DNA from: Podarcis bocagei
Lineage: Eukaryota
Strand: one strand, 5' to 3'
DNA: 64,000 nt
Assembly (NCBI GenBank): GCA_964188305.1
Contig: OZ076890.1
Part shown: piece after piece, positions 34,038 to 46,256 of the stretch
Layout of the letters: every line of letters starts with the position of its first letter
How positions within the stretch are numbered: position 1 is the first letter of the stretch
Notes under the pieces: generated by a model
Database searches by the model: none
What the model was told of the DNA's origin: nothing
Seen by the model: only the letters and a program-made list of their open reading frames with translations
Program-made: the position numbers and the translations under genes

Positions 34038-35807
34038 GTTCTGAATACACATCTGACTGCTACTAACAAGACCAAAAAAAAAAAAAATTGTCAACAAGTC
34101 TCAGTTAAAGGAGTGTTTATTCCCCCAAACCTTTGAAATTTCTCTGCCTCTGAAAAGAAAGATCGGTCTGATTTGTTAAATTAATCACCGACATTTCTCA
34201 ACAATGCTTCAAGCTTCAAACAAACTTATTTTTTAACATCAGCATTTGATATATTATGTTGCAAGTATTTGAAATGTACAGCTATCTTTCATCATTAAAC
34301 TTTCCCTGGTTTTATACTCTGGAGAGTACAGCTTAACAGGTGGGTATAGGCCCTTGCTGCCTGAAACTACCATATGTTGTAGGAAAGAAAATGAATACTC
34401 TAACAGAAGTCTGCTAAGCCAGTTGGTGTTTGCATTTTAGTTTGCATTTCATTTTAATTTTTCCTAAAATGTTTTCATTACTAAAATAGCAACATTAAGA
34501 GAGGTGACCTTCAGCCTGAAGCTCTGTACTTGCTCTTAATGTGTGCCTCAAAAAACTTATTTTAAATGCACGTAAGGGGAGGCATCAGCCATGCATGAAC
34601 TTGCCAAACTACTTTTAAAACAGCAATAGCTATTTCATATATGAAATATATAGCACTATAGAAATGCAGTCACTTTTCTCTATATGCACACTCATATTTG
34701 TTTGATTTCTTGAAATGTTAAATTATAAAGTCCATATCAATCAGTGCTTACATAAATCCTCAAATCCAGCTGAACAAACCATTTCTTAACAAATACTTAT
34801 CAGCTGAATCTCATTATTCTTTTAACCAGCCTAGTTCTTGAGCATTTTTATGTTCTACTTTTGCATCTTGTGGTCACCAAAGATATAAACACAGTTAGTA
34901 TGATGTTCTGTGCATAAAGGAGATGCATGTGGTTTTAGATGGAAGAAGACGACGACAGGAAAAGAGCCTGAAACCAAATGGGAAGAAGCACTGAGCTGCC
35001 TTTCCTATGGATTTCCCAGAAAAACTCTCAAAACCAACCAGACCAATAATTCAATGGGAAAAGCTATTGCACCGTCTGCAATATAATTAATCATAAGGTT
35101 TTGCGTAAAATCTAGGCAATGCGCTACAATTCAGAATATTATGTTTAAAAGTGGAGTTCCCAGGTTTTCCATTAGGCTTGAGACAGAAAATAACTCTTTT
35201 TTTGAAGGTGGATTAAAAGCAGGATCAATATTCACCTTTTGTCCTTGGTTGGGCATGTTTCAGAGGTTTTTGAAGATATTTCAAAACCTGTTTTATTAGA
35301 GATGGCCATGGAATAAAAAGAAAAATGTACACACACTATTGGAAGTTCTCATAAAATCTATTGCCTGCCTGCAGCCTTACACTATTTTCCTTGAACTGAA
35401 GACTGCAGCTGCCTAATTTCATTGATGACACCATTATACTGACTTTGCTGGATCATGGTTCCATTTTTTTAAAAAAACTACTTTACTTGAAATATCCCTA
35501 CTATTTAAAAGGTGTCTAGCCTTTTACTTGGAAGCTGTTAGTCAGTGGACTGAAAGAGCTAGAGCAGCAGCACAGAAAGCATATCTTGAGAGAGTGCAAA
35601 CCCCCCCAAAAAACCTGGCTTAAGGCTTTCTTCTTGTGTCACAGCTAGTATTTTACTATTTATTAAATTTCTATTCTGACCTTCATCTGAGGATCACAGG
35701 ATAGTTTACACTATAAAAACTCAAAAATACATACCACAGTAACAAACAAGTTTAAAAGGACCTAGATTGTCAGACCAAAGGTCTGAAGATGAAAGCTTTT
35801 GCTTGGT

Positions 35808-35920
35808 GCTAGAGCACCAAGTTGAAGCCCCATGCTGGGCAAAAAGATTCCTGCATTGCAGGGGATTGGGCAAGATGACCTTCATGGTCCTCTCCAACTC
35901 TTCTACAATTCTATGATTCG
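35808..35920 (+). mobile_element. tRNA(Lys)-headed SINE with CR1-type 3' tail (head partly deleted)
   Basis: GTTGAAGCCCCATGCTGGGCAAAAAGATTCCTGCATTGCAGGGG...AGATGACC...TCCAACTC...ATTCTATGATTC. Confidence 0.7.
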
Positions 35921-36214
35921 AGGAATACATACAGCAATTGAGCTACGGCTTCCAAGCCATGCTACTAGCAATGAGCAGATGAATTTCCTATCACATGTGC
36001 AAATGATCGAAAGCAAGTGTGGCAGGAAAACGCAGCTCAGAACAATGTGGTGCACAGTAAACAGATAGTTCCTGATCTCAAATTGGGACCCATGTAAATG
36101 TTCAGCAGTGATGGGAACGTAGACTTGGCTTGGGTTGCCACTTAACGCTCTCCCTGTACCATTATCCCCCGCAACACACTCCTATCTGCTTCCCTCCTGC
36201 TTGGGTTCCTAGAT

Positions 36215-37265
36215 CAGTGTTTCCCAACCGGTGTTCCGCGGCACACTAGTGTGCCGCGAGACGTTGCCTGGTGTGCCGCGGGAAAAATTAAAAAATTCGA
36301 AAGATAGCTTCATATCCGGAGAGGCGGCCTTCAGGCGAGTTTTAATTTTAATTTTCCTTCTCCCACTTAATGCCCCACGCTCGCCCGAGCAGCTTGCAGT
36401 CCTTGGTAACCACGGCGACCCGAGGGAGGGGAGGGAACAGGGAAGTCGAGGGCGGCGGCGAGCCGCGATGACGTCAGTGGGCCGCGCCGCCTCGCCCTGG
36501 CACGGTGTGAGAGCCCCGGCTAGTGGCGCGAGCTTCAGAATAAGTGGGATCCGCATGCGCGAGACCGAGATAGCGGGTAAGGAGCTCAGCCCTGGGCAGG
36601 AGGAAGCGGGGCCGTGCATGCGGGCCACATCCCCACAGAGAGCGAGCCTCCCCCGGCCCACCACTCCGGGCAGGTCCACTCGCATGAGGGGGCGGCGATG
36701 GCGACGGCCGGCAGCTTGACTGCAATGCCATCCCTCGAGCAGGCGAGGAGCCCGGAGGCTACCAGATGCGAGTCCTCTTTCCCACCCTGCTCGGGAGTCC
36801 AGAGCACTTGGTCGCATTCAGGATCTAGAGTGGGGAAGCGGGGCTTGTGTCTGGGCTGGACACATTGGGCTGCCTGTGCCGCTCGACCTGCGGGGAGAAA
36901 TCAGGGTGGGAGTCACGACCGTGAGGCAGGGCTGCCAAGTGTGGCAGAAGAGGACACGGCCGTCGCACCTGTCCTTAGGTAGGAGCTTCTTGAACAATTT
37001 TTCAAGTTTCAATTTTCCCCCCTCCCCCTTGCCTTCCTTCTGTGCCAACCGCCAAAAAGCCAAGTCTTGGCTTTTTTCTTGGCTTTTTGGCGGTTGGCAC
37101 AGAAGGAAGGCAAGGGGGAGGGGGAAAAATTGAAACTTACACTTTCGTCCGTCCCTCCCGGTGTGACGCTGCGCGCTGATGTCACGGGGCTGTAATGGTG
37201 GTGTGCCTCGAGATTTTTTTCATGAAACAAGTGTGCCTTTGCCCAAAAAAGGTTGGGAAACACTG
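36215..37265 (+). mobile_element. Non-autonomous hAT (Charlie-like) element with CpG-rich cargo, 1051 bp
   Basis: Perfect 15-bp TIR CAGTGTTTCCCAACC / GGTTGGGAAACACTG; exact 8-bp TSD TCCTAGAT at 36207-36214 and 37266-37273; subterminal GTGCCG repeats; no transposase ORF. Confidence 0.95.
37004..37138. repeat. Long inverted repeat (61-bp arms, 1 mismatch, 13-bp spacer) inside the hAT element
   Basis: 37004-37064 is the reverse complement of 37078-37138. Confidence 0.93.
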
Positions 37266-38229
37266 TCCTAGATGACTACATGCTGCTTCACATGCAGACC
37301 AGTATCTGCAGAATTCAGTTTCCTTCCAACTGGAGATACAGTGGAACAAAACCTAACCCAGTGTTTCCCAACCGGTGTTCCGCGGCACAGTAGTGTGCCG
37401 CTGGACGCCGCCTGGTGTGCCGTGGGAGGGAGTCGGGCGAGTCGGGCTAATCCTCCGACGAGCTCCACCTCCAGACCCATTGCTCAAATCCTTTAACCCA
37501 GGAAGGCAGGAGGGCGGGGAGGGGGGGGGGAAGAAAGAGAAAAAAGAAAGGGTGGAAAAAAAGAAGGGGAAGAGAAAATATTTTTTTAAAAAAAGGAAAG
37601 AGAGGGAAAAAAGCGAGGGATGGAGGAAGGGGAAGGGGGAAGAAGATGGGGGGTGTTTGTGTATAAACAGAAGGGGAGGACAATGAAGAGGGGCGGGGCT
37701 TGGCAGGCAGCAGATAACTGGGGAGGGGGGCGCGGCTGGCGGCGGCTCAAGGCAGGAAGGGAGGAGCTGCCTTGCGGAGAGTCTTGGGCTGCAGAGATTT
37801 CCCGTTCAGGAGCGCGGGAGGCCACGCCGTGGATGGGAATCTCCTCCTCCTCTTCCTCCTCCTCCTCCAGGAGAGAGGGTGGTCCGCCCCACCGAGTCGG
37901 GCGTGCTCAAGCGTGGGAGCCTATAGTTAGAGCTCAGCTCCTTTTCTTGCCTTCCCCGCCCCCCCAGCACATTTTCCCCGCCCCCAACCCCCGCATGTAG
38001 AATAGAAGCCCTCCAGCCTCCACGGTGCACAAACTCTGTCCTCTGCAACGAAGCGCTTTGTTGCATATCTTTGGTGAGGTTTTTAGGCAGTCTTGGTGCA
38101 CCTTAAATCAGCGCTAATTGCGCCTGGACGCAGTATTTACTTCCGAGTAGGCCCCCTTCTCCCCCCCCGTAGCACCTGACGTTGCTATTCGTATCATCAG
38201 GTTTGTTTGTTGATAATTTAATTGTTTTA

Positions 38230-40043
38230 GAGGACTTCCGGGTTGGCGCGATCTGGAAATGGCGGATTCCCTCCGAGGTGCGGAGGGAATCTGCTCAGCT
38301 GAGGACGGGTCTTGCCGCGCCGGCGACGCGGGGACCCTTAAAAACCGCAGGCGCTGAAGCCTGCGGACTGAAGACTCGGTGGGCGCCTTAAGCGCCCCCG
38401 ACTCACGAAGAGCCTTTTTAAAGGCTGCGGAGAGGGTACGGAGGGTGGCGTGGCGCTGAGAGTCGATCGCTACCTCGGTTGAGCGAAGCCGCGAGCCATG
38501 ACTGGAGAGCGCTGACTTCCTTCCTTGAAATTCGGACTGAAAAGAATAACCCGTGAGTAAGACGGAATTGGATTTTAAGAATCCCGTGAATTTGAGACGA
38601 CCGGGGGGTGTGCTAAAAGGAAGTCCGCACCCCCCCTTTTGCAGACGATCTAAAGCAACTACTTAAGAACTAAGCTGGAGAGCCTACCCTTTGTGGGGTG
38701 AGTTAAAAAAGATTTTAACTTCCAAGATTTGGCAAAAAGAAATTTTGAGCTGGAGAGTGGAGTTTTGGAAGCTTTCTTTCTGTTGTAAATAACCCCCCCT
38801 CCCGGGCCCGGGAGCGTCCTGTTTTTGAGCTTGTGGAAGAGGTGCGGAGTTTGACAGCTGTCAAAGCTGTCAAACGGACAGTTTAGAGTGGAAAAATTTG
38901 TTATTTAAGATCCCTCTGGACTAAAATGAGTTACAACTGATCTAAAATTGTTGGAAACAAAGTAATAACAATAAGTAAGAGGATTGTTGGAGAAAGATTA
39001 CCAAGTAACCAGATTCCCTCTAGGGGCAACTCTGTGAAACTACAATGGCTGTGGATGGAAAGTTACTAGTGGAAATCGAAAGAATGTTTCATTTTGTGGG
39101 AATCTTACAAGAGCAGAGTCTAGCTATGAATAAACAACTTATGATCTTGACTTCTGGAACAAGCAGCTCTGCTGATTGTATTGAGGACCTGAATGAGAAA
39201 GAATCCACAGCTGAATGGGAAATGATATCAAAAGAAGTGGAAGAGACTAAACAAGAAAAAGAGGAAATAAAGTTGGAAAGCACCAACCAGAAGCTGACAT
39301 CTGTGGAATATAAGCAAGGAGACTTTTGGATCATATCTACCACAAATCTGCGAAAGATGCAAAAGAAGAAGGAGGAGGCCCCAGGAGTTTATGGAATACA
39401 GGAACTTAAAATAAAGAAATATGATTGGGGCCTCCACTTTGACTCTGACTCTGAAGATGCAGGCCTTGTGGAAACTTTCCAGCAGCTGTTTTCAAATGCC
39501 CTTGTGGGAAGAGAATATGGTTGGATGGTGATAGAACTCTTTCGAGATTCGACGACCGACATAAAGGACTACCAACAAGACCGGCGGAGAGGGACTGAAA
39601 GAGACTTGAAAGCCTCGGACGTGAGGAACCCAGGCTAAGAACTGCTATTTTGGACATGTATTGGGGAAGGGACGAAAACTGGGGATGGGAGGGAGGGAAG
39701 AATAGAATTTTAAAAACACTCAAGATCTTTGGGTTTAGTTAATATGACCTTTATTTAAGACAAAATGGGGAATCGATGGAAGGGAATTTGAGTCCAACTT
39801 AGAAAAATTTATTTTTCTTTATGAAAGAGGTAATATTAAGATGGTTAAGAGGAGAAATACCAATTTGCTGACATAATTCTGGGAATTCGGATGCATGAAG
39901 GGGGGTGGGGGGAAGTCAGGGAACAAGGTTAGGAAAGTAAGATTTTCTGAAATTATACATGTTTTTGTCTTTTGTCTTTTTTGTGTGTAATTTGTCTTTA
40001 TAAAAGGTGAAAAACCAATAAAAATTTGTTTTTTTAAAAAAAA
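38230..40043 (+). mobile_element. Apparently full-length single-ORF L1-like retroposon lacking ORF2 (HAL1-like), 1814 bp
   Basis: Exact 18-bp TSD GATAATTTAATTGTTTTA at 38212-38229 and 40044-40061; 5' start GAGGACTTCCGG...AAATGGCG with CpG-rich 5' UTR; G-rich tract near 39900; AATAAA at 40017 and short A tail. Confidence 0.8.
39045..39638 (+). CDS. 197-aa ORF of the L1-like retroposon; putative shortened ORF1p-like (coiled-coil) protein
   Basis: Only long sense ATG ORF in the element; A-rich coding strand; E/K-rich helical segment followed by TTNLRK, weakly reminiscent of the ORF1p RxNNLR motif; homology not verified. Confidence 0.5.
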   Translation: MAVDGKLLVEIERMFHFVGILQEQSLAMNKQLMILTSGTSSSADCIEDLNEKESTAEWEMISKEVEETKQEKEEIKLESTNQKLTSVEYKQGDFWIISTTNLRKMQKKKEEAPGVYGIQELKIKKYDWGLHFDSDSEDAGLVETFQQLFSNALVGREYGWMVIELFRDSTTDIKDYQQDRRRGTERDLKASDVRNPG

Positions 40044-40269
40044 GATAATTTAATTGTTTTAAAAGCATCATGCTAAAGAGCTCTCTCCCACCCCCAGACC
40101 CTTGGGCAAAACAGAAACACACACATACACAAACACAGAGATTGAGCCCTGCAGGTTTTATGAAATGAATGGATTCTGAATGCCTGTTTCAGTGGCTTGT
40201 CCGCCTTAGGCTGCTGGGCCAGACACCTGTTACACGGTGCAGTCCGTAAGCTGTGAGCGCTGCTACCTG

Positions 40270-40567
40270 CCGCCAAGACCACGTAACGACAGTCTTGAAA
40301 GACCTACATTGGCTCCCAGTACCTTTCCGAGCACAATTCAAAGTGTTGGTGCTGACCTTTAAAGCCCTAAGCGGTTTCGGTCCAGTATACCTGAAGTAGC
40401 GTCTCCGCCACCATCGTTCAGCCCAGACACTGAGATCCAGTGCCAAGGGCCTTCTGGCAATTCCCTCACTGTGAAAAGTGAGGTTACAGGGAACCAGGCA
40501 GAGGGCCTTCTCGGTAGTGGCGCCCGCCCTGTGGAATGCCCTCCCATCAGACATCAAAGAGATAAAC
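40270..40567 (+). mobile_element. L2 LINE ORF2 C-terminal fragment (cargo of the composite hAT)
   Basis: Translates as ..VLKDLHWLPVPFRAQFKVLVLTFKAL.G.GP.YL.. and ..RAFSVVAPALWNALP..; ends abruptly at the internal hAT left end. Confidence 0.85.
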
Positions 40568-40689
40568 CAGTGTTTCCCAACCGGTGCGAGACGTTGCCTG
40601 GTGTGCCGTGGGAGGGAGGCGGGCGAGTCGGGCGGCGAGAGGCGGGGCGGCGGTGGCGGGGAGAGGCCGCCCAGCGCGGGGCTCTCGCC

Positions 40690-40943
40690 GTCTGCCTGCC
40701 TGCGTGGCACTGACGTCACGGGGCTGTAACGTGCCCCACATAGGCACACGCGGGGCGGCGAGCGAGCTCCCTCCCACATCCCATCGCCGCTCGCTTCGGC
40801 CGGCCTACTGGGCTGTCGCAGGCGGAAGGCCTGCGCATGCGCGAGGTTTTCGCGCCTTCGGGATTCCCTTCACGCCTTCCTCCTCCCGGGTCCTTGAGAG
40901 CGCGGGAAGCGGCAGCGCGAGACCGGCGTTGAGCCTGGTAGGT
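40690..40943 (+). promoter_or_regulatory. CpG-island promoter-like segment plus candidate non-coding first exon within hAT cargo
   Basis: CRE TGACGTCA 40711-40718, ETS-like GGCGGAAG near 40821, NRF1-like TGCGCATGCGC 40832-40842, donor-like CTG|GTAGGT at 40938 after which GC content drops. Confidence 0.45.
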
Positions 40944-42054
40944 ATTGCGCTTGCCAAGGCAGTCATTTGGGAAATGAAAACTTGCAAAGCAAGCAACCAG
41001 TTCAATCTGAAGTACGTGTATGCTTAATATCCTGTATCTGAAACCTGTTCTGCCCCCTCCCCCACACTTGGTGCCATTTTCATCTACGCATGCAGCAGAG
41101 TAAGTTGACCCAGAATAGTACCAATTCAGATGGCAGATGGGAGAATGACAGTGCTGAATGCTTTCCCATGTAGAACAGTCCCTGCAAATAAAAACCTAGC
41201 ATATTTGGAAGAGGGATGCTAGCCTAACCATTACCTTCTATGCTGTTACTATTTTTTTATTTTTTTTTTACATAAGTAAAAAGTGACCTTTCCCCATCTG
41301 GCATGGTGGTGTGCCTCGATATTTTTTTCATGAAACAAGTGTGCCTTTGCCCAAAAAAGGTTGGGAAACACTGACCTAACCTATCACCTTGATTACAGTG
41401 CAGACATTGATTCACAGTACAGACATTGCCGCATAGTTAACGTCTGTAATCCACATAGTAGCACAGGGAGTCCAATTATCATATATGGGATACATTTTCA
41501 CTGCTTTTTTAGATTTAAGTATTTCCAGGCTGATGTGCTTTTCTTTACCACGACCACGGATAAAAAATAAATTAAAAGAATGTCTATCATTTTGTGAAGT
41601 TTGGGGAGGAGGAATATATTCCCTAATGACATTATGCATACATAACTCAGTGAGGTTTTCAGCAAAAATGTTTTATGCATGATATTTTAAGAGCCATAGA
41701 AAACACAATATTAAAATTCTAAAGTGAAAAATAATGGCATTATGGCTCATTACATTTCCTATTGCAGTAATCTGAACTGTGAGTAAAGTACTGTCATCCT
41801 GTCATCTAATTCTGAAGGATCTGATGTGTTTTACACAGTGTCATTTACTGCACAGATATAACGAGCGTGGAGTGTTCCAGTTCTGAAGCAGATTGCAAAT
41901 GTTTCCTAACATTCACCTGAGAACAAGCTTCATTGGAAGCTAAATTATCAAGCACAAATGACACTAAAGGGGAGGGAGAAATTGTAAGTGAATAACAAGG
42001 CAGAGAAGTGAAGAAGCATTTGGGTTTCATAAGGAATCTCCTTCTAGTATACAG

Positions 42055-44801: not shown

Positions 44802-45012
44802 GGGGCTGGACTAGATGACTCCTGGGGTTCCCTTTCAACCCTGCAATTCTATGACCTCGGAAGGTGTTTGGGGTCTCCACCACTGGAGGCTTTTAAGCAG
44901 CGGTTGGGGGACCATCTGCCTGGCGTTCTTTAGCTGTGATTCCTACATTGTGAGGGGGCTGGGCTAGATGACCCTTGGGTGGCCCTCCCAACTCTATACA
45001 GTCCTACAGTTC
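44802..45012 (+). mobile_element. Two tandem CR1 3'-end fragments inside the Tc2-like element
   Basis: GGGGCTGGACTAGATGAC...TTCAACCCTGCAATTCTATGA, then CTGGAGGCTTTTAAGCAG...GGGCTAGATGACC...CCAACTCTA. Confidence 0.7.
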
Positions 45013-45156
45013 TGCGGCAGGAGATCCACAGCCACTTCAGACAATGCCCACTCCCAATTTTCATCTGAGAGACATGTGTCTCTCAGTACCCCCCCTACCT
45101 GCCACACTTCCCCCACCCCACTTAAGCTGAGGGAATTCCTGCCCAGAGAAACTCCC

Positions 45157-46256
45157 AGCAATCAAGGAGGAGGAATCCGCTGCAGCCGTGAGCAGCGAAG
45201 AGGATCCATGGTCCCCTTCCTTCCCTCCTCCGTGGTTGCTTTGAAGCAGGAAAGTGGGAGAGGAGCTGCTTACACGAGTGTAAGCTGCTCCCCTCCCACA
45301 TTGCCGCTTCAAAGCAATCACGGAGGAGGGAATCCGCTGAAGCCTCCAGCAGCGAAGAGGATCCATGGTCCCCTTCCTTCCCTCCTCCATGGTTGCTTTG
45401 AAGCAGGAAAGTGGGAGAGGAGCTGCTTACACGAGTGTAAGCTGCTCCCCTCCCACATTGCCGCTTCAAAGCAATCACGGAGGAGGGAATCCGCTGAAGC
45501 CTCCAGCAGCGAAGAGGATCCATGGTCCCCTTCCTTCCCTCCTCCGTGGTTGCTTTGAAGCAGGAAAGTGGGAGAAGAGCTGCTTACAGGAGTGTAAGCT
45601 GCTCCCCTCCCACATTGCCGCTTCAAAGCAATCACGGAGGAGGGAATCCGCTGAAGCCTCCAGCAGCGAAGAGGATCGATGGTCCCCTTCCTTCCCTCCT
45701 CCGTGGTTGCTTTGAAGAAGGAAAGTGGGAGAGGAGCTGCTTACACGAGTGTAAGCTGCTCCCCTCCCACATTGCCGCTTCAAAGCAATCACGGAGGAGG
45801 GAATCCGCTGAAGCCTCCAGCAGCGAAGAGGATCCATGGTCCCCTTCCTTCCCTCCTCCGTGGTTGCTTTGAAGAAGGAAAGTGGGAGAGGAGCTGCTTA
45901 CACGAGTGTAAGCTGCTCCCCTCCCACATTGCCGCTTCAAAGCAATCACGGAGGAGGGAATCCGCTGAAGCCTCCAGCAGCGAAGAGGATCGATGGTCCC
46001 CTTCCTTCCCTCCTCCGTGGTTGCTTTGAAGAAGGAAAGTGGGAGAGGAGCTGCTTACACGAGTGTAAGCTGCTCCCCTCCCACATTGCCGCTTCAAAGC
46101 AATCACGGAGGAGGGAATCCGCTGAAGCCTCCAGCAGCGAAGAGGATCCATGGTCCCCTTCCTTCCCTCCTCCGTGGTTGCTTTGAAGCAGGAAAGTGGG
46201 AGAAGAGCTGCTTACACGAGTGTAAGCTGCTCCCCTCCCACATTGCCGCTTCAAAG
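45157..46256. repeat. Tandem array, 7 x 157 bp
   Basis: ATGGTCCCCTTCC recurs at 45208, 45365, 45522, 45679, 45836, 45993 and 46150; units 2-7 differ at only a few positions. Confidence 0.97.

What the first reader, a model, noticed from the sequence alone, without database searches (positions are those of the whole stretch)
37359..41373. 4-kb composite hAT element: two left ends, one right end, ~3.2 kb of unrelated DNA inside a single TSD
Seen: left TIRs at 37359 and 40568 in the same orientation and one right TIR at 41373. The 8-bp TSD ACCTAACC flanks only the outer pair; the inner left end is preceded by AGATAAAC, which is not repeated downstream. Between the left ends lie purine/CpG-rich DNA, an L1-like retroposon and an L2 fragment cut at the inner TIR. 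Established: hAT transposases make 8-bp TSDs, and non-autonomous TIR elements can capture host DNA (Pack-MULE/Pack-TIR). Inference: this is a cargo-carrying unit, either transposed whole by bypassing the inner end, or built in place by template-switching gap repair that copied another insertion together with its L2 flank.
Basis: partly seen in the sequence, partly recalled or inferred. Interest (0 to 1): 0.8.

Follow-up and report, generated by a model that had tools for sequence, protein, structure and literature searches.

The report
Three-ended compound hAT transposon in lizard
A 4-kb block in a wall-lizard-type genome is bounded by one left and one right end of a cut-and-paste (hAT-type) transposon and one target-site duplication, yet holds a second left end and 3.1 kb of other DNA; it resembles the compound transposons known from maize, and how it formed could not be settled here.

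Summary
Identical 15-bp left ends start at 37359 and 40568, and the right end stops at 41373. ACCTAACC flanks only the outer pair. AGATAAAC occurs once, before the inner end, where a LINE-like repeat is cut exactly at the terminus.

New here:
- A third complete copy (36215-37265, own duplication TCCTAGAT) lies 93 bp upstream in the same orientation.
- The 1.8-kb retroposon is a later insertion with a perfect 18-bp duplication. Its ORF has no L1 ORF1 signature.
- No hidden right end lies inside the block.
- The two left ends are not copies of each other. The outer end keeps the full subterminal hairpin and motif set. The inner end has lost 23 bp of it.

Best reading (about 0.45): a compound unit that inserted whole, pairing the intact outer left end with the right end and bypassing the damaged inner end.

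Rivals: in-place gap filling from another copy plus its flank (about 0.27), and nested insertion followed by deletion between two right ends (about 0.2).

No copy-number, empty-site or donor test could be run. The scan has already reported two similar compound hAT units in this genome. Interest is moderate.

The parts
36207..37273 (+). Neighbouring complete non-autonomous copy 'B' (element 36215-37265, 1051 bp) with its own perfect 8-bp duplication TCCTAGAT (36207-14 and 37266-73). It has the same orientation and lies 93 bp upstream of the compound unit.
   Evidence: It shares only 69 bp at the left and 76 bp at the right with the other copies.
37351..37358 (.). Left copy of the target-site duplication ACCTAACC
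   Evidence: The 8-mer occurs only here and at 41374.
37359..37447 (+). Outer left end: 15-bp terminal repeat plus the full subterminal set (palindrome GCGGCACAGTAGTGTGCCGC and two direct GTGTGCC motifs). Homology to the inner copy stops at 37447.
   Evidence: Alignment A1, motif map, hairpin fold z = -3.1.
37448..38229 (+). Cargo part A: a purine-rich low-complexity stretch, then GC-rich, moderately CpG-rich DNA with a donor-like GGTGAGG at 38073. The last 18 bp are the left duplication of the retroposon.
   Evidence: No other copy in the window.
38230..40043 (+). Later retroposon insertion: CpG-rich 5' region, intact 197-aa ORF (39045-39638), AATAAA and a short poly-A. It is flanked by the perfect 18-bp duplication GATAATTTAATTGTTTTA (38212-29 and 40044-61).
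   Evidence: The ORF has 7 relatives at 48-81% identity in lizard-derived proteins, one of them from Podarcis lilfordi. No Pfam, PDB or Atlas match.
40044..40199 (+). Right copy of the retroposon's 18-bp duplication (40044-61), then cargo part B, which is AT-richer DNA without CpG and is contiguous with part A once the retroposon is removed.
40200..40567 (+). Fragment of a dispersed LINE-like repeat, cut exactly at the inner terminus. Its last 8 bp, AGATAAAC, form the half-site of an earlier hAT insertion. The left limit (about 40200) is approximate.
   Evidence: The antisense translation matches P0001 from FISL (= AGATAAAC) onward, and P0001 runs on about 57 residues beyond that point. The 8-mer is unique.
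40568..41373 (+). Inner complete copy (806 bp). Its left end lacks 23 bp (the palindrome and two of three GTGTGCC motifs). It carries CpG-island-like cargo (40634-40960, CpG o/e 1.01), then AT-rich DNA, then a 76-bp right end.
   Evidence: Left-end fold z = -0.1.
41374..41381 (.). Right copy of the target-site duplication ACCTAACC

Best explanation
This is a compound, three-ended, non-autonomous hAT-type transposon.

Shown. A complete 806-bp copy once inserted into a LINE-like repeat at the target AGATAAAC. That copy, about 1.27 kb of DNA to its left, and an upstream 89-bp left end of another copy of the same subfamily now sit together inside one 8-bp duplication (ACCTAACC). A retroposon landed in the cargo later.

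Inferred. At a donor locus the transposase paired the intact upstream left end with the right end of the complete copy. It skipped the inner left end, which has lost its subterminal hairpin and two of its three repeated motifs. It cut out the whole roughly 2.2-kb block and pasted it here. This is macrotransposition, also called 'end bypass'.

The donor arrangement is most simply a copy nested inside, or lying just downstream of, another copy. That would explain why no right end belonging to the outer left end is on board.
For: - Perfect 8/8 duplication around the outer pair only; it is unique in the region.
- The inner left end abuts a LINE-like repeat cut exactly at the terminus. Another copy of that repeat continues beyond this point.
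- AGATAAAC has the TA centre seen in the other two duplications here and in two same-terminus MITEs from environmental contigs. It is therefore a real transposase-made junction whose partner is missing here.
- No right-end remnant lies inside the block.
- The two left ends differ at 5 of 66 aligned bases plus a 23-bp gap, so they come from separate copies.
- The outer end keeps the hairpin (z -3.1) and the inner end has none (z -0.1). The layout of terminus, palindrome and third motif recurs in unrelated elements with the same terminus, which suggests it matters for function.
- A same-orientation sister copy lies 93 bp away, so closely linked copies, the substrate for this reaction, occur in this genome.
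- Macrotransposons and composite insertions bounded by one 8-bp duplication are documented for the hAT element Ac in maize (PMC4270019, PMC9910405). End bypass is a recognised capture route for TIR elements (PMC8277862).
Against: No second copy of the block, no empty orthologous site and no donor locus was seen, because every route to other genomic copies failed. The same end state can arise in place without moving as a unit. The 23-bp deletion in the inner end may postdate the event. That the motifs bind transposase is inferred from conservation, not tested. For single-copy Pack-TIRs in animals the published evidence favours transposition-independent gap filling (PMC8277862).
Confidence: 0.45

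Rival explanations
1. In-place gap filling. A simple copy inserted at ACCTAACC. A later double-strand break inside it, after base 89, was repaired by copying from another copy of the family elsewhere.
For: It explains the single duplication, the foreign half-site AGATAAAC with its LINE flank, the absence of an inner right end, and the sharp end of homology at 37447. Gap filling by template switching is the favoured origin of single-copy Pack-TIRs in animals and was shown for P elements (PMC8277862). Earlier notes of this scan, which are unchecked, say the family has very many copies able to serve as templates.
Against: It needs more than 2 kb of ectopic synthesis plus one non-homologous join. 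It gives no role to the damaged inner end. No donor was found, although none could be looked for.
Confidence: 0.27
2. Nested insertion followed by deletion in place. An ordinary cargo-carrying copy (outer left end, promoter-like plus intron-like cargo with a LINE fragment, right end) inserted at ACCTAACC. The 806-bp copy then jumped into the LINE part of its cargo. Single-strand annealing or unequal recombination between the two 76-bp right ends removed the second AGATAAAC, the rest of the LINE and the rest of the outer cargo.
For: Each step is ordinary. Copies cluster here (93-bp spacing). The outer interior runs from CpG-rich to AT-rich with a donor-like GGTGAGG at the change-over, like the cargos of the other two copies. 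Right ends are 98.6% alike over 71 bp, which is enough for annealing.
Against: It takes three events. The homology is only 76 bp. It leaves no trace that could be checked in this sequence.
Confidence: 0.2
3. Composite insertion by reversed-ends transposition with re-replication, as for maize Ac/fAc. The facing right and left ends of two neighbouring copies attacked this site during replication. Both arms were re-replicated for a distance, then broke and were joined, which would leave a hidden junction somewhere in the cargo.
For: This process gives exactly this kind of three-ended, duplication-flanked block in maize (PMC4270019). The required substrate, a right end facing a left end across a short spacer, exists in this very window (37265 and 37359, 93 bp apart).
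Against: No internal junction can be recognised. The process has never been shown in a vertebrate. It is a sub-case of arrival as a unit that cannot be told apart here. The 0.05 given here is counted separately from the 0.45 for the best explanation.
Confidence: 0.05
4. Assembly artefact: a false join between family copies.
For: The family is repetitive. No reads could be laid.
Against: Three independent perfect duplications (8, 8 and 18 bp) are each consistent across the structure. A false join would not recreate ACCTAACC 4 kb apart.
Confidence: 0.03

Closest known systems
Maize Ac/Ds macrotransposons (two linked hAT elements moving as one) and Ac/fAc composite insertions
   Same: hAT-type ends. 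More than two termini are on board. Host DNA lies between them. One 8-bp duplication surrounds the outermost left and right ends. An internal terminus keeps its old flank (PMC4270019, PMC9910405).
   Different: This is a vertebrate family with no transposase in sight. The upstream partner is only an 89-bp left end. Movement as a unit is not demonstrated; in maize, excision and reinsertion were observed directly.
Pack-TIR / Pack-hAT elements of animals (Tan et al. 2021, PMC8277862)
   Same: Non-autonomous TIR element with non-TE-looking GC-rich DNA between its ends. The candidate origins are the same three models: end bypass, gap filling, and template switching plus transposition.
   Different: Pack-TIRs are defined by a parental copy of the cargo, which was not found here. 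They normally show two ends, not a retained internal end with its old flank. The cargo here is far larger than their median of 224 bp.
Two compound hAT units reported earlier by this scan in the same genome (s1-352248, s1-347496)
   Same: Same family and genome. Small hAT copies bracket promoter-like host DNA inside one duplication, with one damaged internal end.
   Different: Those have two small elements around the cargo, and one of them has empty sites in related lizards. Here the left partner is a bare end, the internal damaged end is a left end, and no empty site was obtained. Those notes were not re-tested here.

Membership tests
hAT superfamily (non-autonomous member) | 8-bp target-site duplication | tested here: met
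   ACCTAACC x2 and TCCTAGAT x2, all perfect. MITEs with the same terminus in environmental contigs also show 8-bp duplications (8/8 and 7/8).
hAT superfamily (non-autonomous member) | Short terminal inverted repeats of the CAG.. (YARNG) type with subterminal repeated motifs | tested here: met
   15-bp perfect inverted repeat CAGTGTTTCCCAACC. GTGTGCC motifs occur 2-3 times at each intact end. The YARNG rule is from my own knowledge.
hAT superfamily (non-autonomous member) | Mobilised by a hAT (DDE, dimerisation-domain) transposase | not testable with these tools
   No transposase ORF in the window or beside the same terminus in the 40 metagenome loci. The source genome could not be searched.
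Macrotransposon / compound transposon | Outer left and right termini in correct relative orientation enclosing host DNA and an inner terminus, with one duplication around the outer pair only | tested here: met
Macrotransposon / compound transposon | Moved as a unit: further copies with other duplications, or an empty site versus the full block with no intermediate | not testable with these tools
Protein and pattern searches were blank.
Pack-TIR (captured host DNA) | Cargo is a duplicate of a non-TE parental locus elsewhere in the genome | not testable with these tools
   No copy in the 64-kb window. No access to the rest of the genome.
L1 / HAL1-like retroposon (for 38230-40043) | ORF1 protein of the L1 type (Pfam Transposase_22) | tested here: not met
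   No Pfam hit for the ORF or for any of its 7 relatives. A profile search of PDB was also blank. The insertion signature (poly-A, 18-bp duplication) is LINE-type.

The most novel reading that the evidence does not exclude
The block is a frozen intermediate of the route by which this lizard hAT family picks up promoter and first-exon cargo. A copy lands near a gene start. Its own left end becomes damaged. An upstream left end is then used instead, so the flank between them is carried along. The bypassed end later decays, leaving the mosaic 'promoter inside promoter' interiors noted elsewhere in this genome. Capture would then be flank transduction by end bypass, not template switching.
Probability: 0.2. 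Interest if true: 0.65.

Novelty: new member of a known kind. Interest (0 to 1): 0.4.

Why it matters
Natural three-ended elements are rare snapshots that still carry the bypassed end and its old flank. They can show how cut-and-paste transposons pick up and spread host promoters and first exons in a vertebrate. If the block proves to have moved as a unit, it supports end bypass and macrotransposition as a capture route in animals; that route is so far documented directly mainly in maize and for P elements. If it was built in place, it supports gap filling. In either case it is one further example, not a new principle, and similar units were already noted in this genome.

Tried and rejected
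No letters of 41700-41735 were sent to any search afterwards, and work stopped at 41699.
- The protein word search with the ORF spanning the LINE/inner-end junction gave only one LINE-like protein.
- The ORF spanning flank, outer end and cargo gave no candidates. Copies cannot be traced through predicted proteins.
- An exact 27-mer of the inner junction had 0 hits in metagenome contigs.
- The 19-mer terminus gave 40 loci. About 17 are hAT-like ends of other eukaryotes and the rest are bacterial chance matches. None is from a lizard and none shows a transposase beside the end.
- The search of earlier findings by sequence was blank.
- BLAST within the window found no second copy of the cargo, LINE fragment, retroposon, inner cargo or insertion site.
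- A hidden right end for the outer left end was rejected: alignment scores equal those of shuffles.
- The inner end as a recent duplicate of the outer end was rejected: 5 differences in 66 bases plus a 23-bp gap.
- AGATAAAC and ACCTAACC agree at 5 of 8 positions. I put this down to target preference, not to a decayed duplication.
- The 10-nt match GAGTCGGGCG between the shell and 37895-37904 in cargo A was judged compatible with chance.
Full report
**Observation**

- The 15-bp terminus CAGTGTTTCCCAACC lies on the + strand at 37359 and 40568. Its reverse complement ends at 41373.
- ACCTAACC occupies 37351-58 and 41374-81 and occurs nowhere else in 35000-41699. AGATAAAC occurs once, at 40560-67, directly before the inner left end.
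- An 8/8 match at fixed positions has a chance of about 1.5e-5, so the outer left end and the right end share one transposase-made insertion.
- The window has no N.

**New anatomy**

1. A third complete copy of the family, 'B', lies at 36215-37265. It has its own perfect 8-bp duplication TCCTAGAT, the same orientation, and sits only 93 bp upstream. It shares just 69 bp at the left and 76 bp at the right with the others. Its 0.9-kb GC-rich interior is unrelated, apart from a 23-nt motif (37173 and 40707) that it shares with the inner copy.

2. The 'L1-like retroposon' (38230-40043) ends in AATAAA plus a short poly-A and is flanked by a perfect 18-bp duplication (38212-29 and 40044-61). It is a later event. 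When the block formed it measured about 2.2 kb, with about 1.27 kb of cargo.
   - Its intact 197-aa ORF has seven relatives of 176-201 aa at 48-81% identity, one of them from Podarcis lilfordi.
   - The ORF matches no Pfam family, PDB chain or Atlas cluster, and in particular no L1 ORF1.

3. The repeat fragment before the inner end is truly cut at the terminus. Its antisense translation aligns with P0001 from FISL (the codons of AGATAAAC) onward. P0001 continues about 57 residues beyond that point. The label 'L2' was not tested.

4. No degenerate left or right end is hidden in 37448-40567. Alignment scores equal those of shuffles.

5. The two left ends are different copies (alignment A1).
   - The outer end, like B, carries the palindrome GCGGCACAnTAGTGTGCCGC and two further GTGTGCC motifs.
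   - The inner end lacks 23 bp and keeps one motif.
   - As single-stranded DNA, the B and outer ends fold far better than shuffles (z -2.7 and -3.1). The inner end does not (z -0.1).
   - The two ends also differ at 5 of 66 aligned bases.
   - Homology between the outer and inner copies stops at 37447 and 40633.

**Family**

- The structural hallmarks of hAT are met: 8-bp duplications, a CAG-type 15-bp inverted repeat, and subterminal repeats.
- All three 8-mers have TA at positions 4-5.
- The same 19-nt terminus, followed by a palindrome and a third motif copy, occurs in about 17 eukaryote-like metagenome contigs. These include two roughly 200-bp MITEs with 8-bp duplications (CTGTAGAG 8/8; CTTTAACG/CTTGAACG 7/8).
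- No transposase was seen in the window or beside the terminus in the fetched metagenome loci.
- Earlier notes of this scan place the genome in lacertid lizards. They describe this family as abundant, with interchangeable CpG-rich interiors. I did not re-test those notes.

**Mechanism**

Shown:
- An earlier insertion of the inner copy into a LINE-like repeat at AGATAAAC.
- A later state in which that copy, its left flank and a foreign left end lie inside one ACCTAACC duplication.
- A still later retroposon insertion.

Inferred: how the block came to be. Four routes give this end state.

(a) Unit transposition with an alternative left end (macrotransposition or end bypass). The simplest donor is a nested or closely linked pair, which would explain the missing outer right end. 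The damaged inner end offers a reason for the bypass. The sister copy 93 bp away shows that linked pairs arise in this genome. Maize Ac provides direct precedent (PMC4270019, PMC9910405).

(b) In-place gap filling from another copy plus its flank. This route is favoured for single-copy Pack-TIRs in animals (PMC8277862).

(c) Nested insertion followed by deletion between the two 76-bp right ends.

(d) A reversed-ends composite insertion, as in maize.

I rank (a) 0.45, (b) 0.27, (c) 0.20, (d) 0.05 and an assembly artefact 0.03. The three mutually consistent duplications argue strongly against an artefact.

**What could not be done**

From then on nothing from 41700-41735 was sent to any search, and all work stopped at 41699.
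- The look-up of sequencing runs showed that 20 runs from 8 studies and several coded organisms hold 0.39-0.62 of the sampled words of 36100-41600. This cannot be broken down by segment.
- Protein searches across both critical junctions found no copies.
- As a result, copy number, donor locus and orthologous empty site are all untested.

**Comparison and novelty**

- The block works like a maize Ac macrotransposon or composite insertion, and like the 'end bypass' model for Pack-TIR origin.
- Membership in the hAT superfamily is supported structurally.
- Membership in 'macrotransposon' is met for structure and untested for movement.
- Membership in 'Pack-TIR' is untested, because no parental locus was found.
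- The scan has already reported two compound hAT units in this genome (s1-352248, s1-347496). This is a further, somewhat different example: a bare 89-bp left end, and a bypassed left end that keeps its old flank.
- It is a new member of a known kind and of moderate interest.

Noticed in passing
window 37004-37138: Inside copy B there is a near-perfect palindrome: 61-nt arms, 98% complementary, 13 nt apart. It lies just before the right end.
   Followed up: no
window 36978, 38073, 40937: All three interiors (B, outer cargo, inner cargo) run from CpG-rich on the left to CpG-poor on the right. Each has a splice-donor-like GGTRAG/GGTAGG at the change-over, in the same orientation relative to the transposon ends. 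This looks like promoter, first exon and intron start each time.
   Followed up: partly
window 37173-37195 and 40707-40729: A 23-nt motif (GCrCTGAyGTCACGGGGCTGTAA, 21/23 identical) is shared by copy B, where it sits next to the right end, and by the inner copy, where it sits 140 bp from the left end. The outer cargo lacks it. It is probably a relic of the ancestral element.
   Followed up: partly
window 39045-39638; proteins P0002-P0008: The retroposon ORF belongs to a diverged family (48-81% identity) of intact proteins of 176-201 aa in lizard data, with no known domain. The conserved C-terminus is RRRGTERDLKASDVRNPG. Intact frames across such divergence suggest constraint.
   Followed up: partly
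L001:188-390, L016:5608-5825 and about 15 other metagenome loci: The exact 19-nt terminus CAGTGTTTCCCAACCGGTG, followed by a palindrome and a third motif copy, occurs in MITE-like elements of unidentified eukaryotes in environmental assemblies. This end type is widespread well beyond lizards.
   Followed up: partly
window 37265 / 37359: The right end of copy B and the left end of the compound unit face each other across 93 bp. This is the 'reversed ends' arrangement that drives rearrangements in maize Ac/fAc.
   Followed up: no
window 44968-45558: The only other long ORF in the window (196 aa) lies in the GC-richer stretch that another note describes as a 157-bp tandem array.
   Followed up: no
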